Positions 1 to 21,811 of a stretch of DNA of 64,000 nt are shown here, piece after piece. The number at the start of each line of letters is the position of its first letter. Within the stretch, counting starts at the first letter, position 1. A model generated the notes under the pieces. That model searched no databases and was not told the DNA's origin. It saw only the letters and a list, made by a program, of their open reading frames with translations. Position numbers and translations under genes: made by a program. This DNA is from Lytechinus pictus (Eukaryota): positions 13,144,001 through 13,208,000 of the forward strand of contig NC_087247.1 in NCBI RefSeq assembly GCF_037042905.1, in the 5' to 3' direction.

Positions 1-334
1 GCAGCATATCCAACCAAGCCTTGATGCATTGGAATATTTTATACATACCTGCCCTGTAGACAGGGTTTTCAATTAGGGGGTGTAATCCCTTCTCTCTTCC
101 CTTTTCTTATTCTTTTCATCTCCTATTTTGACAATTTCAGGGGGTTCGATTGAACCCTGAACTTTGGGCATACTTACAATTTTGGGGGTTGTTTTTTAAT
201 TCTCGATACTATTAATATTATTAAATATAAACAGTATTCATTTTTCGTATCATAGACATAAAGAATCAAATATGTTATTCCAAACAAACATTCTCAACTT
301 TTTAATTATTTCTTTTGATTTTGTTTCCTTCAAG

Positions 335-3300
335 TTCAACCCAATGTCAGGTCCAATTGGTGGGCGTACCAGGTTAGAAGTCATCGGAACTGATATAGGA
401 GTGGTATTTGAGGATGTTCTCCAAATTCATATTCAAGACTTGGAATGCGATAAGACTGACATGGATGAATATTACCAGGCAGGACAGAGGTAAATCTCAT
501 GTTTTACTCTCTACTTTTTCCCTTTTCCATTACTCTATAGTGGGCGTTGTGGCCCAGTGGATTAGCCTCAGGACTTTCAAACAAAGGGTCGTGGGTTCAA
601 ATCCCAGCCATGGCTTGGTTTCCTTCAGCAAGGTGAGGTACCTGGTAGGAATTAATGCCTTCAAATGTGTGTGCACGGTAAGTAATTGAGGCCTCCAAGC
701 CAAAGCCAGGGTGATAACATCCATGTCCTTTCGAAGCACATAGAGATGTTATATTCAAATAACAAAATAAATCTGAAAGTTAATGCTTTCTTTCTTTCCA
801 ATCAAATGTTTATTCAAAGTTTGATACTCACATTTTTGACGTCCCCTACATTGTCATCAGGAGTAAATGACAATGATTAGATCAATCATAATAAAATGTT
901 TTGAATAAACATTTGATTGGCAAAAAAAGCATTAACTTTTAGATTGGTGTTTTTTTATGTATTACTGAGGTTATGAAGATTTGAATCAGTGATAGGATAC
1001 ACCATCACATGATCATAGCTGTAAGAATCGCATTTCTCGGTTTAGAAATCACCTCAGTGAATATAACTGCATTTTATTGTAAACTGCTACTTTATATTGC
1101 AAGGAGGTGACGTCACCCACTGCTTATAAGTAATCAGGTAGATTTATTGGGATTGCTCTGAGGAACTTTTGATTTTAATAGGCTCCTCCTATTTATTTTC
1201 TTCCCCCCCCCCCCATTTATATGAATAAAGATAGATGTAAACTGAAATGTATGGATTTTTTTCTTTACTTTTACTTTTCTCAATGGTGCATCAGGCCTTC
1301 TAAATGGATAAGAAAGGCAATGAAGTCAAAGAACTTTAACTGTGTGATGAAAATGAGCTGTATTTGTCTCATTACACTCAATGTTTTTGTGTTTGTTTTC
1401 CAGTGTAAGTTGCATGACAAGTATATCTACTGAAGTATTATCAGAACCCATTGGAATCACTGTGATGTCAGGTAATGGAAATAAGACTGGGCAAAGCACT
1501 CAAGATTTTCAGTACAGGGTAAGTTTGATTTTGTTTGCTTGTTTTCTTTTATTTGCATGGCAAGTATATCAACTGAAGTATAATCAGCACCAATTGAGAT
1601 CACAGTGATATCAGGTAATATACATGTAGATAGCACAGAGCACAAGACTTTCAATATAGGGTTAGTTATGTTATATGAAATATCACATTGAAATGATTGC
1701 TGTTTGTGTGTGTGTTTTTTAATCCTGATCACTCTAAAAAATATTAGGTAAAAATGCTCCATGAGGGTTATTACGTATCCAACCAACATTGGGCACTTCT
1801 TTCGGGCATTTTTATTTATCCAGTGGGATGAAAATTTTGCCCATTCTAAAGTAATTGCTGCTTATTTTTTAACCTTACTGGACAATATGCTTCCCCCATT
1901 GGGTAAAATACTGCCCCAATATTGGTTGGACACATAATTACCCTTATGCTTGTTAAAATTTTACCAAATATTTTTTACAGGGATGAAGGTCATAAGGATA
2001 TAACATTTGGTACAATTTGATTATCCCTGGGGGTATTTCGCAAATAGTTAATATGTGACTGTTAAATTTCTAGTTGCGTGCGGTATAGAAAGCATCATGG
2101 CATTGGTCAAATCATGCTAAGATGACGCGTGCCACTGCTTATTAATCAACGAGATTGCGCGGTACATATCATGTGCATTCCAGCATTTAAGCATGACTCT
2201 AATGGAGTGCTGCAAGAAACTTCAATTGCAGGTCTTTTTTTCGGTCCCTAAATCAATCATATGTCTTGTAATTAATTGTAAAGTTGTGATTGATTGCTGA
2301 ACAGCTTCTTGCAATAAGTAGTGTAATCTGATTGGCTACGGATAAAATTTATACGTTGATTTTAAATTCCAACAAAATTTGCAATGGATTGCAAACATTT
2401 TCTTGCAACACCCCCTAAGTCATTCTTAACTCTTTGTGAAACCCTCCCCCCCCCCCTATCCTTTTCAGATGTTACAATTCCATTTCTTATTTGTGTGATA
2501 CATTTTTTTGCATAAAATCACCCATGCTCCTAAATTTTATTTAAGTTCATTTCTGGTGTACATGTAATGCATGTATACTTTTATTATTTGAACGTTTTAT
2601 TTTCAGATTTCATCATGACTGAATTTATTTATGCTATTTAGTACAGGGTTTGTTGCCATACATGTTTTTATTTGGGAAAAGAATTGAAAGATTTAAGGAA
2701 TCAGTGTGAATGTGGTTCAAAGATAATGTGATATATGTAAAAAAATATATTTGAAATGAAACATATATATATATACAATATTATTTTATGGTCTGTATTT
2801 AGGATCCTGCGTTAACAGGGTTTTACCCTATAGAAGGTCCAGTGGCAGGGGGTACAGAAGTCACAATAATTGGGGAGAACTTGGACACTGGAAGGGATAT
2901 TACAGCAAGATTCGGAGATGCAGATTGCAAAGTAATGTAAGTAAATCATTTTTAAAGAGGGTGTTTCATTCCGTTATTAAATCCACCTTATACTCATTAG
3001 TTGCTAAAGTCTGCATAAATCAACTTCAAAAGCTATTTTATTTTGGGGTAAAGAAATATTAAAGGGAGAGTAAAGTCACAAATCATGGGGAAATGAAGCC
3101 GTACAGAAATTTCAGAGATACTTTTTAACTTCCATGTTATAATCTGTCCCTTATGAGGGCCTGTCAGACTAATGTGATAAAATTTGGACAGTGCAAATTC
3201 AATCAACTCAGGATCTTCATTTACTTCAGGTTTTCAAAGTTTTCAACAACCCTAAGTACTCAAAAGATGCAGGACTTGAAAGAGAAAAAGTCATCAATCA

Positions 3301-4858: not shown

Positions 4859-7800
4859 CAAGCATAAGAGAGTGCAAAAAATATAAGACATGTTAAGAAC
4901 TTAGGTCACAGAAAAAATATGTAATATGCCTTGTGAATTCTCTTTTTCAGCAATGTCGAAAGGACTTCTGCAATCTGCATGACAAGTGAAATAACTGAGA
5001 ATAACCAAGTTTCTGTAACGTTAACGATGGTGTTTGATGGAGTAGAAAGAGAATTCAATGGTTACCAGTTCTCCTACATGCCAAATCCAAGAATTGATGA
5101 CATTGATACCACAGCAACAATCATGGCGTAAGTATGACAGGATTCTTATTTGGTATTCATATGTATTTCATATTTTTCAGTTTTCAGAAATTCGAAATTG
5201 AAGATTAAAATGAAATAAGATTCAGAATGACATTGGAAACTGAAGAATAATAGGATGTAGAGTGAGAAACTTGTGGCATTTTAAATATTTGAAGTTTTTC
5301 ATAAGCAGGATGTATTATCAGTAAGCTGTTGATTTGATTCAATTCAATTCAGGTTTATTGCAAAAAAAACATGATTGGCAGTCACAGACTGAATTGTACA
5401 TGTTTACACAATGCCAGTATATAAAAATAATCAAAATTACTAAGATAAACAATGATTATACAAATTAAAATTACATATGTGCAGTTAAAAATGGAGTTGA
5501 AATGGATAAAAAAGTATAGATAATACGATATTGCACATTCATTACACAAATTGCAAACTTATTTACCATGGTACTTATTTAATAATCTTGTCAGACTTGG
5601 AAGAGTACTGTTCTGAAATCTTTTTGTTTTACATGGAATCTCCCTATATTTATTTATATGTCGTAAATTGAAAGCGTTTGTTTTCAGTGGAGGTAACCAG
5701 TTTTTGTACAATCGATTCATTTCTAACTTTAAAGCGAAATCTGTGGTAGGTTTTACTCTTCGACTTTCAAGTGATGTCATTCTTATATGCCTGTACATAT
5801 GTTATTTGTATAGAAAATGTGAATCATTTGACTTAGGATTATTTTCTTTGCATCTAACTCACATCCCCCCCTTCACCTATTATATCGTGGTATGACATTC
5901 ATAAAACAGTGAGCATGCTGATGTACATATATTAATTCATGTAAATGTGGTGATTTATCAGTTAATTGAGGCTAGTTCTGGCTATTCATAACTAAATGTT
6001 TGAACAATCACTAAACATATAGTTTACTGTCATGTTCATATCTTTTTAATGTAAATTTTATTGTTTCTTAATCAGAGGAGGTCTTGATATCATACTTACT
6101 GGTGACAGATTTGATCTGATCCAAGAACCGCTGATAGAAGTTACATCTCTTGCTACCAGTGCTAGCAATAGCGAGGTATGAAAGATTTGAGAAAATGTAT
6201 CAGTAATTTTAGTAGGTTATGATGTATTATTATGTTTCTCTTCTATTTTATGTTACCTGCCTCCTCCCTGAAAGCAATGAAGGCATTGATATTTTTGGTA
6301 CTTCTATCAGCATTTGGATTACTTGTCACAGATACATTGAGTGGGGCGGGGAGGGGGGATGGTGAACTCAATGTACTACAAGAAATCCTTTGGCCGAGCC
6401 TGCTTAGCATGGGCAACTGTCAGGCCATGGAAAGTGAGATGACTTAGCCATAATGTATTTTCCACTGGTATCACAAAATGTCTGCTGGTCTCATTCTTAT
6501 ATGGGGGATTTATATCCAAATGGGGTTTTATAATTCCCTATGAAAACAAATATTAATATCCCTTCAATTCCCTAATCTTATCTGTAGAAGTTATAAATTT
6601 TTTAGTTCAAACAAGTGGTCATTAAACTGAAAATTTCACATGTATTTTTTGTAATCCTTGAAGCTCTGCAACGGAACTGCCACCATTCTAATATGTCCCA
6701 CACCAAGTTTTCCTGATAACGATTCTAGTTCGACCAGAAAGAGAAGAGCACCAGATTCAATGACAGCCAACCTAACCTTTGACTTTGATGGTTACATCAT
6801 TGATGGCGGTACAATAGAATACTTCCCAGATCCTGTGTATTACAGCTTCAGTGCAGACGGTGCAATATATAGCAGTAAAAACCAGCGACTTGAAATTAAT
6901 GTGAGTGTCACGTCTTTTCTTCAGTCCCAATGACATACATTTGTGATATGGTGTTTTGCTTTCCATGGATTGAAAAGTTAAATCTTCATTTACATATGCA
7001 CATTTATAATCGTTTTAAAACTTAAACAATTTTATTGACTCTCTCTATTGTGTAAAACTTGGATGCCTTAGAGTATGTAATGAACAGTGGGCAAAAAGAG
7101 AAAGGTTTTTATATTGATGAATGGCATTTAGATTTACTTATTTGAGTTCAATAATTATTCCTCAGTGATTACATTCATCGGTAGCAAGATAAACTTGCTT
7201 TTGAGATATGAGAGCATTTTGAATAAATTAGTTTATTAACAGCAAAGTATCAGAATACACTGTCAAAAGCAGTGATGTAAAATGCTAAGGATAAAACGTT
7301 TTCCTTCTTTTTTTTTAAGGTGGGGGATGTAACTCTAAGTTGGGTACCATACATTAGCTCAGAGTTTCATAAAAGAAGAAATTACAGTTATATATTTTTT
7401 TCATTAAAGGGCATGAATTTAGACTTGGCGAGTACAGAAGATGATGTGCAAGTTTTCTTAGGACCTGATGGGGAGTGCAATGTTGATTTTCTAAAAGTTG
7501 ATATCCTGGGTTGTCAGCTACCAGAAACCCAACCTCAACCAGGATACTTGAATGGAACGCAGGGTGCCGGAGGTACAAGGAATCTTCCAGCTGTAACAGT
7601 AAGAAAATAGCTTATAATTTTAAGTTTACTCATGCACTAGAAATTTGATGTGGAAGTAGATCATTCATTTTGTTTAAGTTTAGTGGTAACCAAAGTAATA
7701 TCTTTATTTTTGCAGCATGGAAGAGCTTTGCACCAATTTTTTTTCCACACATTTCTCACATTTGCAGAAAGCTGCGGAAAAAATTGCATAAATCGAAAGT

Positions 7801-10800
7801 GTTTTCATCAGAAATATTCCTCAAAGGATGCAATTATCAGCTTATCACATTAAAGACATTGGTTGGTTATTACTATTAAAGGTGCATCTTTTGTGCAGCA
7901 ATCCAAATTTCTTGTATATGTCTTTAATTGGCCTTGGCCTTGTGTTTTTTATGCCTTGACCTTGGCCCCAAGTTTTTTTTTTACATGCCCTGGGTTTGCC
8001 CTTGAGGGTTTATCTTGACAGTGAAACATACACCTTAAAGCAACTGTCAAAGCATGACAGTTCTTTCTGTGACATCACTCTTAATATTGAGGAAGATTAA
8101 AAAGTGAATATTTGCATGCAACATTTACAATGGTGTAGATAAACTACACCATGTTTATCTGTATATTAATTCTTTAACTGTCTACTTAGATTCTACATGG
8201 GAACTTAGTATTTCATCCTGGCTTTGTTTCGGCATGGGCTTCAAATAATAATTCACAGTTGGCTGCTATAATATCTATAGCGGTTGTGGGTATCATTGTC
8301 ACCATCACGCTCATGGTTATTGTGCTTATATGGTTGAGGAAGAAACAACGTCTTGCTCAACGAGCCAAGGAGGAGGTAGAAATGGTTCGTAGTAACATCC
8401 TCAAGAGAATACAAGAAGGTTTGTATTATAATTATTTGTTTGATAATATATTTATCTATCTTTTATTAGATAATCACGGTGCTTTCTTCAGTGAGTAAAG
8501 AAAAAAAGCTTTTCAATAATAATAATGACAATAATAATATTTATATATAATCTCATGTTATATGTTAACCGATGCATTCTGAAAGTTCTGCCACCATTAT
8601 CACAGTCCTGGTATCTTTACATTTAAACTTAGGTTTCTCATTGTTTTTATATAATGAACCTACCAAACTTTGCATTTTGTTCTGTAACATTATGAATCTA
8701 TTGTATACATAATTTGTAATAAAATCTTTTTGTAGTTTTTTGTTTACTCAAATGCATATATCTGTATATTGATACTTTTCATTTTTAAGGGCCGGGCAAA
8801 AATAAAAACCAGAGTTTGTGCTCCCCTTTCTTTTCAAATCCATGGTGTGGAAGAAAACTTGGTCAGGATGCCATATTCATGCAGGGGCACAAACTTGAAA
8901 ATGTTTACATTAATTTTTTGGGGGAGTGCAACTTTACATGAGCTTGGTCTATATAATTTCTTCATGTGGCACATTAAATCTTTCTGGTTTCTTGTTTTAG
9001 TGTCAAACACGAGTTTGGACCTATCTGGAGCTGACGACAGGGTGCAGAAGCATGGGGTACCTTTCAGAGGACATGTCGACTATGTGACCATGATGTTGTT
9101 TAAAGGCTTAGGTGTTCATCCAGAAACAACTGACCCAGAGGTATGTCATAATAGAAAATAATACAATACATCAATAATTAGTGTTTATTCAACATATCAA
9201 TGTATATGCTACTAGTATTAATGTTAACAGACTGGAAGAATAGTTTGTAGATTTCCTTTCCTGTTAAAATATTACAAGGGGATAGAGTTTATGGTCAACA
9301 GAAAAATATCAGTAACCTTGCACTTTTAAGAAACAGTGTTTTTTATCTTGTGTGTTATCCCGGGGGGGCCACTTACATTGACGAGTGGATACCATGCGCG
9401 ACCAAAAAAACACGTAAAAAGGATGTCTTTTTCAAGATATGGCACGTTACGTACGTAACGTGATAAGGGTGTCAAAAACACAAAAATAATGAAAAAAGGG
9501 TATCTATTTCGCTAGGAAAGTTACGTGTTTAGGGTCAAATTAGCAGGAATGATAAAACAAAATTAAAACGTTTTATAAAAGATGTCCTTTTTGCCCCAAC
9601 ACTACCCTACGTGTTTAGAGTCCGATTTGCGCGAGGTGTGGAAGTGGGATCGTACTAAACCAAATAAAAACCGACGACCTAAGGACCCGTGACATAACAA
9701 TAAAATATTCCAGGGCCTACTTGTTTAGGGGCTCATTTCAGGGAATATTTGCCAAGGGTATCGTTTTGTTCCCAATACTTGTTAAGGGTAGGGTTTCACA
9801 CGCCAATACCTGTTAAGGGGTGCATTTTCAGAATATGGAAATTACGTGTTTAGGGTGCTTTTCAAGACCCCATGGTCGCGCATGGTATCCACTCGTCAAT
9901 GGAAGTGGCCCCCCCGGGTGTGTTATAAGTATTGTAGTTCTTCTGCCTGTTTTATGCATGGATGTGGCTGATTGATTGGTTGGTTGGTTGGTTGGTTGAG
10001 GGTGGGTGGGTTGGTGAGTGAGTGAGTGAGTGAGTGAGTGAGGGAGGGTGGGTTGGTGAGTGGGTGAATGAGTGAGGGAGGGAGGGTGGGTGGGTGAGTG
10101 AGTGAGGGTGGCTGGATGGGTTTGTGAGTGGGTGAGTGAGTGAGGGAGGGTGGATGTTTTGGTGAGTGGGTGAATGAGTGAGGGAGGGAGGGTGGGTGGG
10201 TGAGTGAGTGAGGGTGGCTGGATGGGTTTGTGAGTGGGTGAGTGAGTGAGGGAGGGTGGGTGTTTTGGTGAGTGGGTGAGTGAGTGAGTGAGGGAGGGTG
10301 GGTTGGTGAGTGGGTGAGGGAGGGTGGGTGGGTGGGTTGGTGAGTGGGTGAGTGAGGGAAGGAGGGTGGGTGGGTGAGTGAGTGAGAGTGGGTGGATGGG
10401 TTTGTGAGTGAGTGAGTGAGGGAGGGAGGGAGGGAGGGAGGGGGTGGGTGGGTGGGTGAGTGAGGGTGGGTGGGTTTGTGAGTGGGTGAATGAGTGAGGG
10501 AGGGAGGGAGGGTGGGTGGGTGGGTTAGTGAGTGAGGGAGGGAGGATGGGTGGGTGGGTGGTTTTGGTGAGTGAGTTTGAGTGAGTGAGTGAGTGAATGA
10601 TTTTATTTGGCAAGTCACCATAACATATTATGCACTAGCATTAAAAATAACACTATGGTAAATGGAGACTTGTATTCAAGAATCACATTTTTATTTGCAG
10701 GAAGATTGAAGATCAGGAAGATTTTAGTGAGCACTGTTATTTCCCTTAATTATGTCTTTGATGGATGAAAGCTTGTATACAAGCATTACATATTATTTTC

Positions 10801-13800
10801 ATTTGTAGTACATGGAAGACTTTATGGAACACTCTGTGATATCATTCTATCGTATGCTTAAGAAGAAGGACAATTTGATGGACTTCATCAGGCAATTAGA
10901 AAGAAAGAAAGAACATCATGGCCGTGAAAGGTATCAAAATTGTGATGCACTTCCAGACTTTGATTATACAAGTTTCTTAAGCCCTGTTTATCTTGTCGCT
11001 TATTCAAAGGCAAATAACAGCTTTTTAAAATTATTTTTTAAAACACAAGCTATGCTTTGGAGTGAATCCATTTATTTCCAGATATTGGCACTTCTCTAGT
11101 TGTGTACCGGTATGTGTATTATAAATTGTCAATAGAAAAGAATAACCTACGTGTACAAAATTTGTTAATATTCATTTGTATTATCAACTTGTTTCATATT
11201 TTTTCTGTTGGAAATGAAAGTACATGAACGTGAATTCGATTTTGAAAAGGTGACTATTATCCAAACTAATTTATTTTCTTCCTTTAACAAACTTCTTTAA
11301 TTGATATCAAAGGTTATAATGATATGGTGATGATGATAATTCTAGTTATTAATGATATAAGACCGATGATAATTATCTTAATTGTGATAATGACAATCAT
11401 GGTCATCATAATCTCCAGCATAGATGAAACGCTGTTGCTGGTACGTAACAATACGGCTAACATGTTATTTCACCACATTTTTAACAGTTATCTTTAAAAC
11501 CCTGTTTTGATCATGAATTTCTATTGAAAAGTGGGTTTGAGTCTCTAGTCCACTTGTTTTCGTTTGACAAATCACGACCCAAGCCCCTTCTGTTTATATT
11601 TATTTAGTTAGTTTGAGGCTAATTGATTTTTCTTCTAAACAGGGAAATCATAGCCTCTCTTTTGGCAATATCACTCATCAGCGAAGGAATGGCCATCCAT
11701 TTCACAGAGTAAGTCATTTTCTTATTAGTGGTTGAGATTAGAGTATCTGCAATTCAAAGATGTAGTGAAAATAAAGTCATAAGACCTGCAAGAGTACTAT
11801 TTTTAGCTCTAATTTCAGTGACAACTGGATTTTATGTTGAGGTGTTTCCTATAATTAAAATCATACCTGCTTATTATCATGAAAAAGTAAAAGGTGCTGG
11901 CTGAAATATGTTCTTCTGTCTTTCTAATTGTTCTCACACTTTTTATTTTTCTGTTATTTCTTTTTCTTCCTCTTCTGCTACTTATGTTTCTTTCTCCTCT
12001 TCTTCTTCCTTTCCTTCGTCATCTTTTTTTCTTCTTCCTATTCTTTTATTCCTTATTATTTACCTTTTTCAGTGTTTTGCTGTCATTGGTTGAAGATGAA
12101 ATCAGAAAAGCATCTGAATCCAGAAGACGGATGGATGCACTCTTCATCAAGTAACATTTTGGTTTATCACTATTTTCTCTTTTTAAAAGTTGATATGTTA
12201 TACTCTCTCCTTCTTTATGTATTTTATTAAATAAATTGCTTAAACTACAATCTGACACAGCAAATAGCCAATTGTAAATTAGGTTAGATCAGGGTACATT
12301 GCCGCTGCACGCTTGGGCTGCAGTAGCTTATGGTCTACATCAAGTTACACATATTTTCCCCTCTTATTAGTGAATTTGTGATTCTTAACTTAAACCTTTT
12401 TTTACAAGAGTGTAGGGAGTGGAGACGGTGCTCTTTATGTGTTGTCAATTTAGGTACTTGTGTAACAATGTTAAACACTCACAGGCATCATTCTGATCGA
12501 TGTACTAGTATTAAAGCATATAAGATATAAGTGTTGCCTCTGAAACCACCTGGGACCCGTAACACAAAAGTGAGTGATTAATAATCGTACGCTTGATTTA
12601 CACGATTGATCGCACATCGTTGTCAGTGCAATCAATTGTTAAAAAGTGTCCTACGATCATTGCGAAGCTTTGTGTTACGGGCCTTTGATGACATAGGTGT
12701 TATATTACTTTAGAGAAAAAGAGTTCATATTTTGAATAACATTCTATTTTCTTCACGTACGCAGCACGGAAACAATAACAGAAAGATTACTCAGCAGCTG
12801 GTTTGCCTTGGTTATGTTCTCTTACATGGAGGTAATTGCAGTGATTCTATAAAACGGAAAAGTATTTTCAAGAGGCACCATTGCAGACTTGCCAACTGTC
12901 CTGATTTTATCAAGATCATTTTGATTTTTTACTATAAAAATAGCCAAGAATCAGGCCATCCTGATTTCTGAAATTTCATGAGAGAAACAAAAAGTGGAAA
13001 GAATTGCTGGAGACCCATCCTCCCCCCCCCCTCCAGTCCTCAATACACCTCTGATTGCCCAGTCCGTAACCCTAGCTTGACATTCTATTTATTCATTTTA
13101 TTTATTTTGTCGAAAAAAACAGAAATAAAATGATAGAAAACAAACAGAAGAAATTTAAAAAAACAATATACAAAAGAAGTTGATTTTGGTACCAGATTTT
13201 TTTCCTTTCCTGTTGTTAGGAATGCTCTAAAAATATTTTGAAAATTAGTTTTCTAGGAGCTTTATTTAGAGAATTAGAGCAAAAAGTATGATTTCATGAA
13301 TAAATTAGCATAATAAATCATTTAAAAGAAAAATATATGAATTTAAAGGTTGTGCAATTTACCTAAGCAACAGCGTAGGTTATGTCATTTTGTACATTTG
13401 TGCAAATTTTCGTCATGATCACGCGATCCGCGGCAGAGATCTTAGTTGGGGCCTATAAGCTTACAAAATTATAGCCCAGGTAATTTAGGGTAAAGGGTTA
13501 AGTTGCTAAAATCCAGGAGCTTCAGGGGGCACTGCCCTCCTCCTGGCACTTTGTTGACCCCCTGGAACCCAGAGGGTTGTCCAAATTTTGCATTTTTCTA
13601 GTTGTTGGCAGGTATGCCATTGGTAAATTTGTATTTGCAGTGATTAAGTCTTCATGATGAAAATTTTTGAAAAACATCAATTTTCAATTGATTATCTTAA
13701 TGAAATGTAAATTCAACTGTGATGTTGTAATGAATTTTTGTTTTATAAATGAACATCACAACGGATTATTCTCCTTATATTAATGATAAATTGGAAATTT

Positions 13801-16800
13801 GTGATATTACATGCATATTTCGATACGTAATGAAAACTTGGATTTAAATGGGTTAATGTTTCCATTTATAATCCTGTACCTGTTTCTCTCTCTATAGACC
13901 TACACATTTTATCCTCTATATATGCTGTATCAAGCAATTAAAACCCAGACTGAAAAAGGCCCGATAGATGAAGGAACAGGCGAGGCATACTATACACTAG
14001 AGTACAGCAAGTTGTTTGATCAGATCATTCAATTTCATTCTCTCGTAAGTACACGGTGTCCCTATTCTTTCCTGGAATTTATATTATATGCGTACAGGCA
14101 TCATGATAGATTTTTTTTTCAATTTCCTATGGCTACATTGTTAATGTCTTGACTGATATATCTAAATGTTTACTTCTATGATATGAAAAATGAAAGTCCC
14201 ACACTCCTGATCCTATACTCCCTCTCCCACTCCTACTTCCATGCCCCTACTCTCACTTCCATTCCCACTCCTCCCTTTCCCATTCCTACACTTCCCACTC
14301 CTATATTCCCACTCCTAATCCTCCATCTCCCACTTCTAATCCCACTCCTAACTATCCCACTTCCACTCCTTCACATCTATTTTTTGCTCCCACTTTCACT
14401 CCCATTTCTCACTCTCCCACTCCTACTCCCACTCACCGACTCCTGCTCCCACTGCTACTCTTCCCACTCCCACTGCTACTCCTTCACATCTACTTCTGCT
14501 CCCACTTTCTCTCCCATTCCTCACTCTCCCACTCCTGCTCCTACTCCCATTTCCACTCCTCCCACTTCCCTCCCACTCTTACTCCTCTTCTCCTATCCCC
14601 ACCCCATTCCTACTCCTCCCTCTCCTATTCCTACCCTTCCCCATCTCCTATTCCTACCCTTCTCCCTCTCCTATTCCCACCCTTCCCCCTCATATTCCTA
14701 CCCTTCTCCCTCTCCTATTCCTACCCTTCTCCCTCTCCTATTCCTACTTTCTCCCTCTCCTATTCCTACCTTTCTCCCTCTCCTATTCCTACCTTTCTCC
14801 CTCTCCTATTCCTACCCTTCTCCCTCTCCTATTCCTACCCTTCTCCCTCTCCTATTCCTACCCTTCTCCCTCTCCTATTCCTACCCTTCTCCCTCTCCTA
14901 TTCCTACCCTTCTCCCTCTCCTATTCCTACCCTTCTCCCTCTCCTATTCATACCCTTCTCCCTCTCCTATTCCTACCCTTCTCCCTCTCCTATTCCTACC
15001 CTTCTCCCTCTCCTATTCCTACCCTTCTCCCTCTCCTATTCCTACCTTTCTCTATCTCCTATTCCTACCCTTCTCCCTCTCCTATTCCTACCCTTCTCCC
15101 TCTCCTATTCCTACCCTTCTCCCTCTCCTATTCCTACCTTTCTCCCTCCTATTCCTACCCTTCTCCCTCTCCTATTCCTACCTTTCTCCCTCTCCTATTC
15201 CTACCCTTCTCCCTCTCCTATTCCTACCCTTCTCCCTCTCCTATTCCTACCCTTCTCCCTCTCCTATTCCTACCCTTCTCCCTCTCCTATTCCTACCTTT
15301 CTCCCTCTCCTATTCCTACCCTTCTCCCTCTCCTATTCCTACCCTTCTCCCTCTCCTATTCCTACCCTTCTCCCTCTCCTATTCCTACCCTTCCCTCTCC
15401 TATTCCTACCCTTCTCCCTCTCCTATTCCTACCCTTCTCCCTCTCCTATTCCTACCCTTCTCCCTCTCCTCCTTCAATTACCACTCTTCCACTCCTCCCT
15501 CTCCTCCCACTCCTACTCATCTCACTCCCACTTCACATAAGATAACCTACTCCCATTCCCAACCCCTACTTTACATTTTCTTGGGCCGTATTCTGAAGTC
15601 GGGTTTAACTTAGACCATGGTCTAACTTTGTGCTAAAATTATGGGGAGCCAAAATTTCAAAAATTCTGTTTATATTGTATATTTCTTATGTTTACTATTT
15701 TGTTTCCTTTTGCTTTCATAATGAATAAAAATACTTCATTAATCATTCCTAGACAATTATGAACAATTTGAGTGTCAAATTAGTTAATAAAGTGGATTTG
15801 TACTGTTAGGGATTTGTGCTTCAATTGGCTATCCATAGTTAAACCACAACTTAAAACCAGAATACGGGCCCCTTGTGTTTAAATCTGTTTTACTGTGATT
15901 TGAAAGGCCTTTGAGAACAGACTTGCACACAAGCCTACACTTACAACTTTAGATCAACAAGATACCTTATATTCACTGATCATGTAAATGACATGATGAT
16001 TGATGCACAAAAGAGAAATGCACCTGGCTTATTGCTTAATTTCTTAACATTCATTATCTCCTAATTCTACAATTTTTGTTGATTGAAGGCTCTAGATGTA
16101 GTAGATGAAGACGGCCATATCTATCTTCATGTTAGTGCCCTGGATGTCGACACTGTAAAGCAGGTCAAAAAGAAAGTCCTTGATTCTATGTGGAGGGAAG
16201 GGTACTGTCTGCTTCCCAGAGACGTGGATGCTGTAGACGTTGGTGAGATTATGAATTTAGAATCATAAAAAAAGAGTAGCGATACCTTGTTAATAATACG
16301 TATTAATAAATGATAATAATAATAAGGTCATATTTACCCTGGGTAGCCACTTCAGTTCTGAAAACCATTCTCCAAGCGGGTTTGCCACATTAATTTGCAT
16401 TGAAAAAAATAGGTGTTCTTTTTTATCTTTGAGATAATATGAAAAATCCTATTCGCACCGACATATGGAACCTGCGCTGGTCTATTAGTGCCTTTAATTC
16501 ATTGGCATATTGACATCTTTGTTACATCATTGATACTGGCATATTGGCTCCTCAACATCCTTTGACATTGGTCTAGTGTTTATCTATTCTGGTAATAATT
16601 GAAATAAGGATAATATTCAACATTTATATAGTGCTTAATCGGAACGACGTCTCTAATTAGCTTTACCCTGGTCATTGGATCCTGGCATGCCCACATGGCT
16701 TGTTATAAGATGCTGTGTACATGTAAGTAGCAACGTAACTTTTCGGTAAATTTGTATGGGCAGCCATAAGGGCCAAATTTAAGCAGCTGGGTAAAAGTGG

Positions 16801-19800
16801 AGTGTACAAGCTAGCCAGCTGGCCAATATCTCCTATATGGTTTCTTTCAAAGTACAAAGCTACAAATTATTTGTCTGAATTCAAGAGGACAGCACAATGA
16901 TTTTTCCAAATTACCCCCCCCCCTCCCAAAGATTACCAAATTCTGTAGAATTGAAACTACAAAGAAAATACATTTACAAGTGTGAACATATGTCAATACT
17001 GTCACACATTTATCGAATTTGTGATCGATCTTAATTTTGCAGTGTGGGTGCAAGGCAATGGACAGTCAGTACTGCTTCAGGAAACATCGGAGGGTCAAGG
17101 AAAAACCATTGCCAATACAATAACAAGCTATGGGGTAAGTCAAAGGGGGGTTATGTATAATTGACCAGTACAGACAACATGGGCTACATAAATATTTGTA
17201 TGTTCTGATGATAAAAGATGTAGAGTAAGTCCTAAATGTATTTATTATTCTGTAATTTTAAAGAAGAAAAAAAATATATCCATAGTTTATGGAAGAATGT
17301 AATGTTAGGTGGGTTAAACAAAATGGTAAACATTTTGATGTCAAAAGCTTAATTTCGTCACCAGATTTTTTGTTAATCCACCTAGTGCACACCTCAACAA
17401 TAAATTAATTTCCTAGATAAATTTGCATCATTCAAAATATTTCAGACCAAGAGTTCTGATGAGATGTCGGCTTTCAATGTGCTGTTTCTGATTGACTAAA
17501 TTTTGGCATGTATGGCTGCCTATACCCTCTCACATATTTTAATTGAACATTATTTAACAATTTTACACACCTTACATAGTTGATAACTCGCCTTACTCCC
17601 AAAAGATTCGAAATGGAGATTGTGTAGCACTGATACCAAAGCAGTATGGTCAAGCTAGCATGATTGACGAATATCAAACTCTTGATTTGAAGGAGGTTTC
17701 TTCAGACAAATGTAAGAATTTTTTTGTTTAATTCCCTTTAAAATACTAATATGTTCATTCATTTTTATACACCCGCCCGGCAACGGGTCGGGACGTATCA
17801 TGGTATCATGCTCGGTGTCTGTTCTTCTGTCTGTCCGTCCGTGCATTTACTTTTCCTTGTAAACTTCATATAATGTGGTCTGTATGATACGAGCATGGAT
17901 CCCATGAAGCCTATTGATTTTGAGGTCAAAAGGTCAAAGTCACAGTGACATGTTTTCATCTTACCCTTCTGAAGTCCTTGTTAACACGATAACTTCAGTT
18001 TAAAGATAAATTCCAGTTCCAGTATCAATAAAAATATTGAAATAATAACAAAGCTAACATTTGACTAGAGAATTAAGGAATAGGGGTATTTTTTTCTTCA
18101 AGTTTGATGGTGACAGTTAATTTCTTGCATTCTATACATTGCTCTTGAATAGTTTCTGTGGAGGTAATGTCGGCCATTGGATCTATGATTTAACGCTATA
18201 TTACATGTGAAATATGATGACATATTTTTCAAGTCTGTCATTTTTCATGTGGAAAGTAGTAATTATTTTAGTTTAATCCCTTTTAGATGAAAGTTTACTA
18301 CTCCCAACATCTGTGGATGTTCTTGGTGCACAACTCACACAAGAGGGTTCAAATGTCATTCATCTGAAGGTATAACTTCTTGAGTAATTTTTTTAACCAA
18401 AGAAACCGACTTTCAAGAAATTAATTTAACCAAACCTTATGAAACCAACTGATAATCAGTATTCAAAGTAAGAAATTGTTCAGATTTCTGCCTATACTAT
18501 TTTGATTCACAATGCTATGTCGTACTAGCTGCATTGCAGAATATTAAGTTTTCAGAATTAGGAATTGAGTTACCATTCCGTTGAAATGCATAAAATTTTT
18601 TAGAAAATTAACTATTCCTGTATGGAAAATTTGACGTTCACTGGTGCATAACAGATACAAACGTTTGCAAGAGAAATGAGTTAACAATGAGATAACATCT
18701 GTATTTTAGCATGCTGTGCAAGGTGCCTTCTAAACTAATGAATTAAGATCCTGGCATCATTTGATGAATCGATCATGAATCACGATCGATAAAATCACAA
18801 TCAATCGTGATTGTTGTGAATATGAGATAACAAAATACAATTGCTTTGTACAGGATCTTGAAGAACAAGCTAAGATGAAGGAGAGTGCTATGCCCCACCA
18901 TATCCAACAGAAGCGGGAGAACTTGGATCGAAATCTTGCAATTCCTCATATGCTGACAATGAAAGTGGGTGCTACCTTACCAATACTATTTCTTTTTCAT
19001 ATGATAAGGAAAGGACTTGCCCAAGAAAGATACATGGTGTACTGTGAAACCTACTACACTATTCTTCTTTGCCATGGAAACCTTCAGAAGTTACATAGTA
19101 TTCACAAACAATTATGAAAATGAAGTTATAGTTGAAATGCTCTTTCTTTATCCACCCATCAATGAATGGCAAGCAGGGAAACATGTCAATTTACATTTTC
19201 ACCACCTTCTTCTTTGTTATTATTAAGTTAGCAAAGTAATTTCAAATCAGAAGTATATATTTGTAAAAATTATGAGCTTAAAATATGGCCCATATTCTGA
19301 ACTTAGGGTTTAATTTAATCTCTGGTCTTAAAGTTGTGGTTCAACTCTGGATAGCCAATTGTTATGTGATTCAATTTATCTGCTCATTCCGCACTTGGAT
19401 CATTCATAAGTGATTAGGAATGATAACTAAAGTAGTTTTCTTCAGTACTTAAGTATGAGGAAAGAGCAAATTAAACATAAGAGAGATACAATTTAAACAA
19501 ACTTTTACATTTTTGGCTTTCCATAATTTGGTTAGAGAGTTATATGTAGACCAAAAAATGACATGTATCTGCCATTCAGACATATTTTACCCACATTTCA
19601 TGGTACATGATATCATACACTCAATTGATTGTCTGTAGGCTGCTATTAGCCCGTGTGTGGACGGTGTCTTTGAGGTAATGTTCAAGAAGCCAGACATCGT
19701 ACCACTACCAATCAAACACCTCTTTGACACATTCGATGATCTCGCTGTGAAATACACAGAAGGGGTCCATCCTGAAGTCAAGTCGGAAAAATGGAAGAAA

Positions 19801-21811
19801 AATTGGTGAGCAGATATTCACGCAAATCCTCTGAACAAGATTCCAGTGCCTAACTATCATTATATTCTGTTGAGTCACATTTTACATACATGTAGTCCTA
19901 ATGAATACACTGTGGACATTCAGACAGAGAGGTATCCGCAGTGTGGCATTGTCTCCATACTGTTACCCATTGCATTCAGTACCTATTTAAAACTAAGATT
20001 GAAGGATAAGGTATCTTATCTTTAAGAATGAAATATTGCACTACATTGTATTATTTCCAAAATTCCAGGGCGGGGGGGGACAATTATGAATGCTCTGTAG
20101 CATTCCGAGTAACATTATTGTAACTCTTTAGCGAACAGTAGATTTACGATCAATGTAAATTGCATGATAGATTCATTGGACTGTATCTTTATGCTTTAGG
20201 GTGCGGAACTAAAGTCCTTTGATGTTCTTTCTTTTTCTTTTATAGTTTGTCCAATTTTTGGTGTTCAGTGCTGACCAATCTGCCATCTTTGTTTGAGATG
20301 CCGAGATCAGAGACAGCTGATAGATGCGTTGACATTCTTGCTGATGCTCTTGGTCATGTGACCAAGAGCATGTCCCTACAGACACAGGTGAAAATTTATT
20401 TATTGAAGGATGATCCAAATCAACCGGGGGCCGGGGGGGTTCACCTCATGAACATGGCATTTATTTTCTTGGCAAGCCCCTCTGTTCTATTGTTCTATTT
20501 CATTTACCGGTACTTCATTAGTCAAAGTCACTTTAGTTAACCTTGGTTCCAATTTGAATTTGATTATTTCTTTTATTCTTTTATTGATAAATATCGTTAT
20601 GATTGTCTTTATACTTTGTGACATTTGCTGTAGTTCTTTTGACTGTATTCTGTTGTACTTTGTGAACAGAAAATGAATATGAGATATCTAACCTCAAATC
20701 CTATCATGTAAAGTATATGTTAGCTATTTGTGTTGTCAGCAAGGAAATAAACTGTTCGTCAGGAAGTGTTTACTGTTGTAACAATATTCATTTGAGAGGT
20801 GTGCACTGTATGACTAATGCGAACATTTCCCTAGTTCCCTCTCTCTTTGTTTTGTGTTGAGTGGTCTCTGTTTATGTTGCATATTACCCCAAATTTCGAA
20901 TGATTACATGGAATAGAAGCTGATCATCATTTCTTTATTTTCATTTGAATCTAGGAGGAACCTGACCAGCTGCCTTACTACAAAGAATATCCCTTATACA
21001 GACAAATGTTGACCAGCTTCTGTAATGAAATCGCTAATCAGCCAAGGGCTAGTCCAGGAAAAGTCAATAAAGCTTGCTCCAACGTCTCAAAGGTATGCAC
21101 AACAATTCGCCTCCGACTGCATGTTTAGTTTGCATTTTTCCATTTGATCATTAAGGTATCTAGTTTTTGTTTTGATATTATCTATTTTATCTGATCTTTT
21201 TAGTATCTATTTCATTTAAGATTTAAGTGTCCATCTGTTATATGATAAGCCTAGGCCCACCTTGTTACCCAAGAACAGATATCCTAGGGCAGTATTCTGA
21301 ACATCGGTATTCTGGTGGATGTCATAAACTTTTTTCATAAAAAATGTCATAAATTTTGTCTCTTCTCCATAGCATGCACAAAAATGAGCGCGGCCATGAA
21401 CGCACACAATCTCATTATTAGCAAGAGATAAGATTTATGACAGGGTCTAGCAGTAAAAAATGTTGTTGTTTCTTTTAATACCATAATATCCCGATACTAT
21501 TATGTCAACTGTGTGTCAAGCACAAACTGATATTATTTGGATTAGATTTTTTTTTAGAAGTCTCACTCATTATTCTTGATTATTAAAAAAAGAATATTTT
21601 TTCATACCTCAAGTAGTTGGGTCTACATGCTTATTCCAGGTTTTTTTATTCTCTGTTTTTCCTTCTTTCTCTCTTTTGAAAATCTTTCACAATTCCAGTT
21701 TGCTTTTTTTTCATTCTTCTGCAGGAATTCAAAGGACAGTTCAGTAATCTTTCTAATATGATGCACCTTTACAACTGCACCAAGAGTGATGTGGAAAACC
21801 TTTTAAAGTAG
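335..21811 (+). CDS. Plexin-like receptor (5'-partial; IPT repeats, TM, split GAP domain with Rho-binding domain insert), 23 coding exons in window
   Basis: Phase-consistent GT-AG exons: 335-489, 1404-1518, 2803-2936, 4951-5127, 6076-6175, 6664-6900, 7410-7598, 8190-8418, 9001-9140, 10809-10930, 11643-11708, 12073-12150, 12765-12831, 13898-14044, 16089-16242, 17043-17134, 17606-17711, 18287-18369, 18854-18964, 19639-19805, 20246-20387, 20955-21092, 21725-21811 (3036 nt, open, TAG at 21809-21811). Plexin hallmarks: IPT starts FNPMSGPIGGRTRLEVIG and FYPIEGPVAGGTEVTIIG; TM AAIISIAVVGIIVTITLMVIVLIW followed by RKK; PLYMLYQAIKTQTEKGPIDEGTGEAYYTL; RBD LDVDTVKQVKKKVLD; VPLPIKHLFDTFDD...WKKN. The Sema domain lies upstream of the window and the last exon is less certain. 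Confidence 0.9.
540..735 (+). mobile_element. tRNA-derived SINE (intronic)
   Basis: Head GGGCGTTGTGGCCCAGTGGATTAG (A box)...GGTTCAAATCCC (B box), then a non-tRNA body. Confidence 0.7.
1553..1666 (+). pseudogene. Degenerate tandem duplicate (pseudo-exon) of plexin exon 1404-1518
   Basis: ttgcatggcaagtatatcaactgaagtataatcagcaccaattg...ttcaatatagggttagtt aligns to ttgcatgacaagtatatctactgaagtattatcagaacccattg...ttcagtacagggtaagtt; TTA>TAA stop and no acceptor. Confidence 0.8.
1730..1980. mobile_element. About 250-bp MITE-like element (second copy inverted at about 52914-53171)
   Basis: Imperfect terminal inverted repeats cactctaaaaaatattaggtaaaa / ttttaccaaatatttttacag; clear reverse-complement similarity to 52914-53171. 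Confidence 0.65.
3499..4700 (-). mobile_element. 5'-truncated CR1-group (CR1/L2/Crack-like) LINE: RT C-terminal half, 3' UTR and (ATTGA)n tail
   Basis: ORF 3806-4891 contains YINDL, LFGDDT (RT catalytic motif variant), WLQCNKLSLNLEKTK, FLGIKI...LSWKPHI and LYNTLVLPHLTYC; (ttcaa)n at about 3499-3515. The N-terminal part of the listed ORF is (GA)n read-through. Confidence 0.88.
5335..5800 (-). mobile_element. Short LINE 3'-end remnant
   Basis: Residual ORF end SLESRR...KTKRFQNSTLPSLTRLLN typical of CR1-group ORF2 termini; (ttcaa)n tail at about 5335-5352. Confidence 0.65.
6664..6900 (+). CDS. Plexin exon carrying an RKRR furin-type cleavage site in the IPT region
   Basis: Translates LCNGTATILICPTPSFPDNDSSSTRKRRAPDSM...; ag acceptor at 6662-6663, gtgagt donor at 6901. 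Confidence 0.85.
8190..8418 (+). CDS. Plexin transmembrane exon
   Basis: Hydrophobic run of about 24 aa followed by LRKKQR; canonical splice sites, in phase with neighbouring exons. Confidence 0.88.
9359..9918. mobile_element. 560-bp non-autonomous DNA transposon with about 46-bp TIRs and an 8-bp TSD
   Basis: TIR CCCGGGGGGGCCACTT(A/C)CATTGACGAGTGGATACCATGCGCGACCA at both ends; perfect TGTGTTAT duplication at 9351-9358 and 9919-9926. Confidence 0.9.
9965..10600. repeat. Compound tetranucleotide repeat (GAGT/GGGT/GGGA/GGTT)
   Basis: Direct inspection; source of the spurious THSP/HPPS ORFs. Confidence 0.9.
14200..15540. repeat. Pyrimidine-rich minisatellite with a 23-bp core unit TATTCCTACCCTTCTCCCTCTCC (core about 14620-15470)
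   Basis: About 35 near-identical tandem units with degenerate CT-rich flanks. Confidence 0.92.
15583..15870. mobile_element. MITE (related inverted copy at about 19287-19550)
   Basis: Ends GGCCGTATTCTG / CAGAATACGGGCC; internal similarity to the 19.3-kb copy. Confidence 0.6.

What the first reader, a model, noticed from the sequence alone, without database searches (positions are those of the whole stretch)
12073..20387. Intact plexin lacking all three GAP arginines: candidate pseudo-GAP, decoy or scaffold plexin
Seen: spliced translation gives MDALFINTETITERLLSSWF (exons 12073-12150/12765-12831) and KWKKNCLSNFWCSVL (exons 19639-19805/20246-20387). Established: plexin GAP domains carry LRRTE(S/T)VxEKxLTNW and WKxNxLPLRFW, whose arginines (R1677/R1678/R1984 in human plexin-B1) are required for GAP activity. 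Here RR is replaced by IN and LPLRFW by LSNFW. Yet 23 exons stay in frame with canonical splice sites and the RBD is kept. Inference: a maintained but catalytically dead plexin that signals by scaffolding or antagonises active plexins.
Basis: partly seen in the sequence, partly recalled or inferred. Interest (0 to 1): 0.8.

Follow-up and report, generated by a model that had tools for sequence, protein, structure and literature searches.

The report
Sea urchin plexin with dead GAP site
This sea urchin gene encodes a complete, transcribed and evolutionarily maintained plexin receptor whose intracellular enzyme site has lost all three essential arginines and most other substrate-contact residues, so it is a natural example of a plexin that must work without its usual GTPase-switching activity.

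Summary
Window 12073-20387 is part of the cytoplasmic region of a 1857-aa plexin, annotated "plexin-B1-like", Lytechinus pictus (P0025). My independent model of its last 19 exons matches P0025 at all 817 residues.

- **Arginines:** the Arg-finger pair RR reads I1426-N1427 and the secondary Arg reads N1739, with a one-residue deletion. Two canonical plexins in the same genome keep MRR and LPLRFW.
- **Rap contacts:** of seven further positions around the Rap-binding site, five of them shown by mutagenesis to matter, only one is kept.
- **Transcription:** spliced contigs from four runs of one study confirm the junction that carries the RR position. They also show an I/V allele there, never Arg.
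- **Selection and fold:** dN/dS against the S. purpuratus ortholog is about 0.17 in the cytoplasmic part. An AlphaFold model (pLDDT 82) matches every solved plexin intracellular region (TM 0.70-0.77).

The gene is not an oddity. It belongs to a well-supported sea urchin clade (Lytechinus, Strongylocentrotus, Diadema) in which no member keeps the Arg finger. Sister clades have lost other catalytic residues.

It is most likely a pseudo-GAP plexin with GAP-independent output; how it signals is untested. I found no published description. An earlier report in this scan covers the same gene's multiple Sema-head cassettes.

The parts
330..489 (+). IPT exon (P0025 residues about 846-897); start approximate
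   Evidence: exact match to P0025
1401..1518 (+). IPT exon (P0025 898-936)
2803..2936 (+). IPT exon (P0025 937-981)
4951..5127 (+). IPT exon (P0025 981-1040)
6076..6175 (+). IPT exon
   Evidence: AG/GT borders, ORF
6664..6900 (+). IPT exon
7410..7598 (+). last IPT exon
8190..8418 (+). exon with the transmembrane helix (P0025 1238-1263) and juxtamembrane helix
9001..9140 (+). cytoplasmic exon, start of Plexin_cytopl
   Evidence: the loose end of the X1 contig matches its 3' end
10809..10930 (+). cytoplasmic exon
   Evidence: joint 10930|11643 in 4 runs
11643..11708 (+). cytoplasmic exon
   Evidence: joint 11708|12073 in 4 runs
12073..12150 (+). exon ending ...MDALFI + AA. I1426 (12146-12148) stands where the Arg finger should be. 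N1427 is split between 12149-12150 and 12765.
   Evidence: An allele with T at 12145 and G at 12146 gives V instead of I in X3 and X4.
12765..12831 (+). exon TETITERLLSSWFALVMFSYME
   Evidence: joint 12150|12765 (X1) and 12831|13898 (4 runs)
13898..14044 (+). exon with the conserved EKGPID..TGEAYYTL motif
   Evidence: PF08337 hit
16089..16242 (+). RBD exon 1
   Evidence: X1 loose end at 14045 continues into it
17043..17134 (+). RBD exon 2
17606..17711 (+). RBD exon 3 with VALIPK (P0025 1587-1592), the counterpart of ...VALVPK in Plexin-A1
18287..18369 (+). linker exon (low pLDDT in the model)
18854..18964 (+). second GAP half, exon 1 (LAIPHMLTMK)
19639..19805 (+). exon ...PLPIKHLFDTFDD...KWKKN + TG
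20246..20387 (+). exon C-LSNFWCSVLTNLP... N1739 (20253-20255, AAT) replaces the secondary Arg. S1743 replaces the Asn at +4. D1769 and H1773 replace Gln and Asp of helix 15.
   Evidence: exon fully held in X1 and X7
20955..21092 (+). exon with the degenerate activation segment (EEPDQLPYY in place of SPSNKLLY)
21725..21811 (+). last coding exon with stop TAG at 21809-21811

Best explanation
The stretch is the cytoplasmic half of a bona fide, expressed plexin gene of Lytechinus pictus (RefSeq 'plexin-B1-like', 1857 aa). Its RasGAP-like domain has become a pseudo-enzyme.

**Shown.**
- The receptor keeps the full plexin build (Sema head, PSI/IPT stalk, one transmembrane helix) and a confidently modelled split GAP fold with inserted RBD.
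- It lacks the Arg finger (I or V), its neighbour (N), the secondary Arg (N), and six of the seven further positions scored around the Rap-binding site.
- It is spliced as predicted and evolves under purifying selection.
- It belongs to a sea urchin clade in which every member has lost the Arg finger.

**Inferred.**
- It cannot stimulate GTP hydrolysis on Rap and probably does not dock Rap in the canonical way.
- Its maintained cytoplasmic domain therefore signals without GAP activity.
- The likeliest routes are the retained RBD (binding or sequestering Rho-family GTPases) and the retained juxtamembrane and helical scaffold, possibly in mixed dimers with catalytic plexins, while the ectodomain binds semaphorin-type ligands.
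For: - **Gene model:** identical to P0025 over 817 aa. Pfam finds Sema, PSI, TIG, Plexin_cytopl (211 bits, profile positions 1-433 of 441) and Plexin_RBD.
- **Residue mapping:**. Numbering was checked against mouse A3 N1728, Q1754, D1758, P1772, N1774 and K1775 from PMC3787391.
- **Same-genome controls:** the two canonical plexins keep RR and LPLRFW.
- **Transcripts:** spliced contigs in X1-X4 give joints 10930|11643, 11708|12073, 12150|12765 and 12831|13898. One allele reads LFVN.
- **Selection:** dN/dS 0.17 in the cytoplasmic part, with dS about 1.
- **Phylogeny:** the clade has 100/100 support on a long stem (0.98). The ortholog pair with S. purpuratus P0013 has 99/98.
- **Relaxed active site:** within the clade, the ten catalytic/contact columns are conserved at 0.54, against 0.75 for other columns that are invariant in canonical plexins (resampling P = 0.003). 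No residue has replaced them consistently.
- **Fold:** AF2 model pLDDT 82, pTM 0.83. It matches all solved plexin intracellular regions at TM 0.70-0.77.
- **GAP-independent roles are known:** engineered GAP-dead PlexinA2/A4 keep some functions (PMC12963419).
Against: - No enzyme assay has been done.
- Four arginines conserved across the clade but absent from canonical plexins (P0025 R1305, R1353, R1669, R1756) could not be placed in 3D, because the tools return no coordinates.
- The closest L. pictus paralogs (the C17 array) carry Arg at the secondary position (LS-RFW), so that position is not lost throughout the clade.
- Some Diadema members keep the second Arg of the pair (SR, GR).
- Canonical sea urchin plexins have Ser where vertebrates have Asn1774, so that one position is a weak marker.
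- The signalling route is entirely inferred.
Confidence: 0.75

Rival explanations
1. The domain is still a GAP but uses a non-canonical catalytic arrangement. Either a clade-specific arginine reaches the nucleotide, or the finger is supplied in trans by a catalytic plexin in a mixed dimer.
For: - Four arginines are conserved in the clade and absent from canonical plexins.
- Plexin GAP activity requires dimerisation (PMC3787391).
- The cytoplasmic domain is under purifying selection.
Against: - Not only the arginines are lost. The Switch I and Switch II contact residues are replaced too (N+4, Gln and Asp of helix 15, Pro-x-Asn-Lys of the activation segment).
- These columns vary within the clade, which indicates a relaxed rather than a rebuilt site.
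- SRRRM is not conserved.
- R1756 lies 17 residues after the lost Arg, in sequence between the Switch II-contacting helices and helix 15. From the helix layout it should be far from the gamma-phosphate; this is an inference.
Confidence: 0.08
2. The GAP-like domain has been re-purposed as a non-hydrolysing binder (effector-like) of some small GTPase, as in IQGAP's RasGAP-related domain, rather than being a passive scaffold.
For: - The fold is kept and under selection.
- The former active-site surface has changed while the core is conserved.
- The long stem branch suggests a burst of change followed by constraint.
Against: The ex-catalytic surface is the least conserved part within the clade, which argues against a shared new binding site there. 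No partner is known.
Confidence: 0.12
3. The gene is a decaying copy (young pseudogene), or a pure ligand sink whose tail no longer matters.
For: - It is the most divergent Plexin_cytopl in the genome: 211 bits against 683 for a canonical plexin.
- The gene family has many tandem copies and at least one dead Sema cassette upstream.
Against: - Twenty-three exons are open with canonical splice sites.
- Spliced RNA is present in four samples, at depth 77 in one.
- Cytoplasmic dN/dS is 0.17, lower than the ectodomain part at 0.27.
- The tail is conserved between Lytechinus, Strongylocentrotus and Diadema.
Confidence: 0.03
4. The arginine loss is an artefact of a wrong exon choice.
For: The RR position straddles a splice junction. 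Duplicated exons exist elsewhere in the gene (1554-1616; upstream C1a/C1b).
Against: - The junction is seen in RNA contigs from four runs.
- No second copy of either motif exon was found in the window.
- The same states occur in independently annotated orthologs.
- LSNFW lies wholly inside one exon.
Confidence: 0.02

Closest known systems
Canonical plexins (e.g. mouse Plexin-A1 3RYT, Plexin-A3 3IG3, zebrafish PlexinC1/Rap1B 4M8N), and the two canonical plexins of this genome at C3:57.2 Mb and C3:9.98 Mb
   Same: - Full domain order: Sema-PSI-IPT-TM-split GAP with RBD.
- The intron falls at the same place at the RR site.
- The sequence match spans the whole intracellular region (E = 3e-66 for the S. 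purpuratus relative).
- The model superposes at TM 0.70-0.77.
   Different: - Arg finger pair, secondary Arg, Asn+4, helix-15 Gln and Asp, and the activation-segment Pro-x-Asn-Lys are all replaced.
- There is a one-residue deletion before the secondary Arg position.
- The C-terminus is shorter.
- Pfam score is 211 against 683 bits.
Echinoderm-specific plexin expansion (Acanthaster 'Plexin-B1 to B8'; S. purpuratus expansion; Junqueira Alves et al. 2019, PMC6374515)
   Same: A lineage-specific, tandemly duplicated plexin family in echinoderms. Automatic names such as 'plexin-B1-like' and 'plexin-A4-like' are used.
   Different: That paper does not use the word 'arginine' in its main text (text search), so it does not appear to address the catalytic arginines. 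I recovered only sea urchin members of this clade, and no starfish or sea cucumber member. Equivalence with the starfish 'Plexin-B' group is untested.
Engineered GAP-dead plexins (Plxna2 R1746A, Plxna4 R1745A knock-ins; PMC12963419)
   Same: Loss of the secondary Arg. These mutants retain some GAP-independent functions, which shows a plexin can act without catalysis.
   Different: Those are single laboratory mutations in otherwise intact sites. Here the loss is natural, affects many residues, is shared with sea urchins as distant as Diadema, and is fixed in a clade.
IQGAP RasGAP-related domain and other pseudo-GAPs (from my own knowledge, not tested here)
   Same: A RasGAP-type fold kept under selection without an arginine finger.
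   Different: A different protein family. IQGAP binds Cdc42/Rac through that surface, whereas in this clade the ex-active-site surface is poorly conserved.
Met and Met-LP receptor tyrosine kinases (PMC6374515)
   Same: A plexin-type ectodomain is kept while the intracellular output is changed.
   Different: Met and Met-LP replaced the GAP domain with a kinase. Here the GAP fold is kept but disarmed.

Membership tests
Plexin family (semaphorin receptors) | [quoted passage not shown] | tested here: met
   Pfam on P0025 finds Sema, PSI, TIG_plexin, PSI_PlexinA-B, TIG_2 and TIG. The Sema exon lies about 34 kb upstream of the window.
Plexin family (semaphorin receptors) | Single transmembrane helix, then Plexin_cytopl (split RasGAP-like domain) with an inserted RBD | tested here: met
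   - The TM helix is P0025 1238-1263.
- PF08337 scores 211 bits over profile positions 1-433 of 441; PF20170 scores 46.9 bits.
- The AF2 model matches all solved plexin cytoplasmic regions.
Plexin family (semaphorin receptors) | Binds a semaphorin | not testable with these tools
   No ligand data are available.
Catalytically active plexin RapGAP | Arginine finger (first R of LRRTE; zebrafish PlexinC1 R711) | tested here: not met
   I1426 (V in another allele) followed by N1427.
Catalytically active plexin RapGAP | Secondary arginine (LPLRFW; zebrafish C1 R1001, mouse A3 R1724) | tested here: not met
   N1739, with a one-residue deletion.
Catalytically active plexin RapGAP | Switch I/II contact and neighbouring positions (C1 N1005, N1009, Q1032, N1052, K1053, plus the Pro 'lid' and helix-15 Asp; five of these were shown by mutagenesis to matter) | tested here: not met
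   The window protein has S, N, D, D, Q, and E and H at these positions. Only the N+8 residue is kept.
Catalytically active plexin RapGAP | Measured stimulation of Rap GTP hydrolysis | not testable with these tools
   Needs a biochemical assay.
Pseudo-enzyme (pseudo-GAP) | Enzyme fold retained, catalytic residues missing, sequence under purifying selection, gene expressed | tested here: met
   Fold. Residues. dN/dS 0.17. Spliced RNA.
Plexin class A or class B | Groups with class A or class B in a tree of cytoplasmic domains | tested here: not met
   It sits in a sea urchin-only clade (100/100), nested among other echinoderm-specific clades and apart from the vertebrate A and B sequences. The tree is midpoint-rooted, so deeper affinity is open. 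The 'B1-like' name is automatic.

The most novel reading that the evidence does not exclude
Sea urchins maintain a whole clade of plexins that has given up GAP catalysis. Each member keeps a selected, folded tail and, in this gene, sits behind several alternative Sema heads.

That would make them a diversified recognition-receptor system with a new plexin signalling mode. Two possible modes are pseudo-GAP tails that allosterically regulate catalytic plexins in mixed dimers (as pseudokinases do) and tails that act purely through Rho-GTPase capture at the RBD.
Probability: 0.25. Interest if true: 0.8.

Novelty: new variant of a known kind. Interest (0 to 1): 0.62.

Why it matters
The GAP domain is regarded as the best conserved and functionally central part of plexins, from choanoflagellates to humans (PMC6374515, PMC8011033). 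GAP-independent plexin signalling has so far been studied mainly with engineered point mutants.

A naturally disarmed plexin clade that is expressed and under selection offers three things:
- a natural experiment on what a plexin tail does without catalysis;
- a map of which surfaces stay constrained (RBD, juxtamembrane and core helices) and which relax (the Rap site);
- a caution that automatic names such as "plexin-B1-like" hide functionally different receptors.

The mosaic pattern across echinoderm clades (finger lost, secondary Arg lost, or both) also gives a graded series for testing how much of the site is needed.

Tried and rejected
- **First structure prediction.** The first AF2 run, using a 12-sequence sea urchin-only alignment, gave pLDDT 34 and was discarded. 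The 43-sequence alignment worked.
- **Exon search.** A 55-aa exon searched against 1.84 billion representatives gave only 9 hits, but these supplied the S. purpuratus and Diadema relatives.
- **Regex for the RR motif.** It missed the motif in the canonical genes because the motif is split by an intron. Translating the Pfam-hit exons solved this.
- **Paralog DNA.** RR states of the paralogs were therefore taken from the 3-kb loci already held and from database proteins.
- **Literature.** Whittaker et al. 2006 ('The echinoderm adhesome') is not held. Searches for a natural pseudo-GAP plexin found nothing relevant. This is absence in the held library only.
- **Rejected: pseudogene.** See rival explanations.
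- **Rejected: splice artefact.** See rival explanations.
- **Rejected: SRRRM as a compensating arginine.** None of its three positions is conserved within the clade: SRE in the S. purpuratus ortholog, SGR or SIE in Diadema, RRP in the C17 copies.
- **Not attempted.** Complex prediction was not used, since no binding claim is made.
- **Not possible.** Distances in the model could not be measured, because no coordinates are returned.
Full report
**1. What is in the sequence**

The window is G000:C3:13144001-13208000, plus strand, in an 812-Mb animal genome. The database identifies the species as the sea urchin Lytechinus pictus.

Reading the DNA and solving each junction against a related protein gives 19 exons from 6076 to a TAG at 21809-21811. 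All have AG/GT borders and together they form one open frame of 817 codons.

This model is 100% identical to residues 1041-1857 of P0025, "plexin-B1-like [Lytechinus pictus]". P0025 is 1857 aa and is encoded on a contig of exactly the length of C3.

Four more IPT exons lie at about 330-489, 1401-1518, 2803-2936 and 4951-5127.

Pfam on P0025 finds Sema, PSI, TIG_plexin, PSI_PlexinA-B, TIG_2, TIG, Plexin_cytopl (211 bits, profile 1-433 of 441) and Plexin_RBD at 46.9 bits.

**2. The arginines**

| Position | Spliced protein | Canonical plexins, same genome |
|---|---|---|
| Arg-finger pair | ...SESRRRMDALF-I1426-N1427-TETITERLLSSWF | LLMRR\|NESVAEKMVSNW; FMRR\|..SVVEKMVGHW |
| Secondary Arg | ...KWKKNC-L-S-N1739-FWCSVLTNLP | SLPLRFWVNLIKNP |

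- The canonical genes lie at C3:57.2 Mb and C3:9.98 Mb, and their intron at the RR site is in the same place.
- HMMER alignment of the S. purpuratus relative P0003 to mouse Plexin-A1 and Plexin-A3 covers the whole intracellular region (E = 3e-66). It puts T-N on R-R and N on the R of LPLRFW, with one residue deleted.
- A 40-sequence alignment gives the same columns for the window protein.

Counting from the secondary Arg reproduces the published mouse A3 numbers N1728, Q1754, D1758, P1772, N1774 and K1775 (PMC3787391). The further Rap-contact and neighbouring positions can therefore be scored:

| Canonical residue | Window protein |
|---|---|
| N+4 | S |
| N+8 | N (kept) |
| Q+30 | D |
| D+34 | H |
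| Pro | E |
| Asn | D |
| Lys | Q |

In the paper, mutating N1005, N1009, Q1032, N1052 or K1053 of zebrafish PlexinC1 strongly reduced or largely abolished GAP activity. R711 and R1001 are the finger and its stabiliser. One caveat: canonical sea urchin plexins have Ser at the Asn1774 position.

**3. Is it a live gene?**

*Transcription.*
- Four runs from one study hold contigs that skip the introns exactly: 10930|11643, 11708|12073, 12150|12765 and 12831|13898.
- One 1571-nt contig has no mismatch at depth 77 and continues into the neighbouring exons on both sides.
- These contigs must come from spliced RNA.
- Two runs carry an allele (C12145T, A12146G) that turns LFIN into LFVN. The finger position is therefore polymorphic I/V and never Arg.
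- Exon 20246-20387 is fully held in run X1, which carried spliced contigs, and in X7 from the same study. It is partly held in runs of a related organism.

*Selection.* Nei-Gojobori dN/dS against the S. purpuratus ortholog locus (P0013, L043), over 788 codon pairs:

| Region | dN/dS |
|---|---|
| Overall | 0.20 |
| Ectodomain part | 0.27 |
| Cytoplasmic part | 0.17 |

dS is about 1.

*Fold.* With a 43-sequence alignment, AlphaFold2 models P0025 1264-1857 at pLDDT 82 and pTM 0.83. The ex-catalytic regions are above 85 and only the RBD-GAP linker is disordered. Foldseek matches all solved plexin intracellular regions (TM 0.70-0.77 by query, 21-26% identity) and isolated RBDs.

**4. Context: a family, not an oddity**

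The Pfam scan of the genome shows two strongly matching plexins and many weak ones: C3:1.3, 4.2, 13.06 and 25.4 Mb, and an array on C17 at 17.15-18.52 Mb.

Database relatives and a maximum-likelihood tree define a clade, called alpha here, with 100/100 support and a stem length of 0.98. It contains:
- the window gene and its S. purpuratus ortholog P0013 (99/98);
- a second camarodont group, S. purpuratus P0003 plus the L. pictus C17 copies P0023 and P0024;
- five Diadema proteins.

No alpha member keeps the finger. The RR pair reads IN, TN, TK, GK, SR, GR or GM. The secondary position reads N (window, S. purpuratus), Q (Diadema) or R (L. pictus C17 copies: LS-RFW, codon CGC).

| Clade | RR pair | Secondary Arg | Members / source |
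|---|---|---|---|
| alpha | IN, TN, TK, GK, SR, GR, GM | N, Q or R | see above |
| beta (sister clade) | RR | H (LPLHYW) | includes the neighbour gene about 80 kb upstream, L040 |
| others | RS/RN | R | P0039, P0040 |
| others | KS | R | P0037 |
| others | RR | R | P0034 |
| sea cucumber | SR | R | P0069, P0071 |
| clam fragment | SR | C | P0074 |

PF08337 scores fall in step: canonical 683, then 362, 335, 292, and alpha 204-211 bits.

Within alpha, the ten catalytic/contact columns are conserved at 0.54. Other columns that are invariant in canonical plexins are conserved at 0.75 (resampling P = 0.003). No replacement residue is shared. The old active site is relaxed while the rest of the domain is held.

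**5. Mechanism**

*Shown:* intact architecture, transcription, purifying selection, a confidently modelled plexin fold, and a lost catalytic and Rap-contact set.

*Inferred:*
- There is no RapGAP activity and no canonical Rap docking.
- Because the tail is more constrained than the sampled ectodomain, it must do something.
- The best candidates are the RBD, whose ...VALIPK strand is kept (P0025 1587-1592, aligned to ...VALVPK of Plexin-A1), and the juxtamembrane/helical scaffold used for dimerisation.
- From memory, the LVP motif in Plexin-B1 is needed for Rac/Rnd binding.
- GAP-independent roles of engineered GAP-dead PlexinA2/A4 (PMC12963419) make this plausible.

*Against a compensating arginine:*
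- SRRRM is not conserved in the clade.
- Four clade-specific conserved arginines exist (R1305, R1353, R1669, R1756), but their geometry could not be checked.

**6. The rest of the gene**

In the 40 kb upstream I see at least three large Sema exons. One has an in-frame stop. There is also a duplicated exon pair, followed by the PSI/IPT exons. P0025 uses the cassette at window -34440..-33388 as a single leader-plus-Sema exon.

This agrees with earlier notes of this scan on the same gene, which report seven tandem head cassettes. I checked this only in part.

**7. Novelty**

- The echinoderm plexin expansion is published (PMC6374515; Whittaker 2006, not held). A search of the 2019 paper's main text for 'arginine' found nothing.
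- Three further searches found no natural plexin without the finger.
- I rate this a new variant of a known kind: a natural pseudo-GAP plexin clade.

Limits:
- no assay has been done;
- one of the two junctions was not read in RNA;
- only sea urchin members were recovered, which does not prove absence elsewhere;
- the tree is unrooted in effect.

Noticed in passing
G000:C17:17.15-18.52 Mb (loci L045-L062): There is an array of at least 9 alpha-type (LS-RFW) and at least 8 beta-type (LPLHYW) plexin tails. The two types mostly alternate, with neighbouring tails about 60-120 kb apart. Many copies are near-identical at the exon examined, suggesting recent segmental duplication of a two-gene unit.
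   Followed up: partly
G000:C3:13.055-13.069 Mb (L040, L064), about 80 kb upstream of the window: The neighbouring plexin gene is of the beta type. It keeps the RR pair (…QLKSLFRR|TETIVEKLLANW) but has His in place of the secondary Arg (LPQHYW).
   Followed up: partly
window 12145-12146: Expressed allelic variants C>T and A>G in runs X3 and X4 change I1426 to V at the former Arg-finger position. X2 shows one mismatch just upstream.
   Followed up: yes
window 9997-10600 and 14363-15470: Two intronic tandem-repeat arrays lie here. One is G-rich, with 38- and 106-nt units. The other is C/T-rich, with a 23-nt unit repeated about 37 times at 95% match. They explain the sharp GC-skew swings and give long spurious ORFs.
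   Followed up: partly
window 11930-12049, 12530-12769, 13250-13369: These intronic segments have very high contig depth in the RNA-like runs (hundreds to thousands), and the contigs run on into unrelated sequence. They are probably dispersed repeats transcribed elsewhere, not exons of this gene.
   Followed up: no
window 1554-1616: This is a degenerate second copy of the IPT exon at 1401-1518 (CMASISTEV*SAPIEITVISG), with an in-frame stop, about 35 bp downstream of the used exon.
   Followed up: no
upstream of the window: -38118..-27030 and -22204..-21730 (loci L034, L038): At least three tandem Sema-domain exons lie here, the third with an in-frame stop. There is also a duplicated downstream exon pair. 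RefSeq model P0025 starts in the second of the three cassettes seen here.
   Followed up: partly
P0074 (Ruditapes philippinarum, plexin-A1-like, 691 aa): This clam plexin-tail fragment has SR in place of RR and Cys in place of the secondary Arg (LLLCFW). Catalytic-site decay in plexin paralogs may therefore not be confined to echinoderms.
   Followed up: no
window 50218-51063: A long ORF is rich in Q/W/P/Y with acidic ...QENMME... repeats.
   Followed up: no
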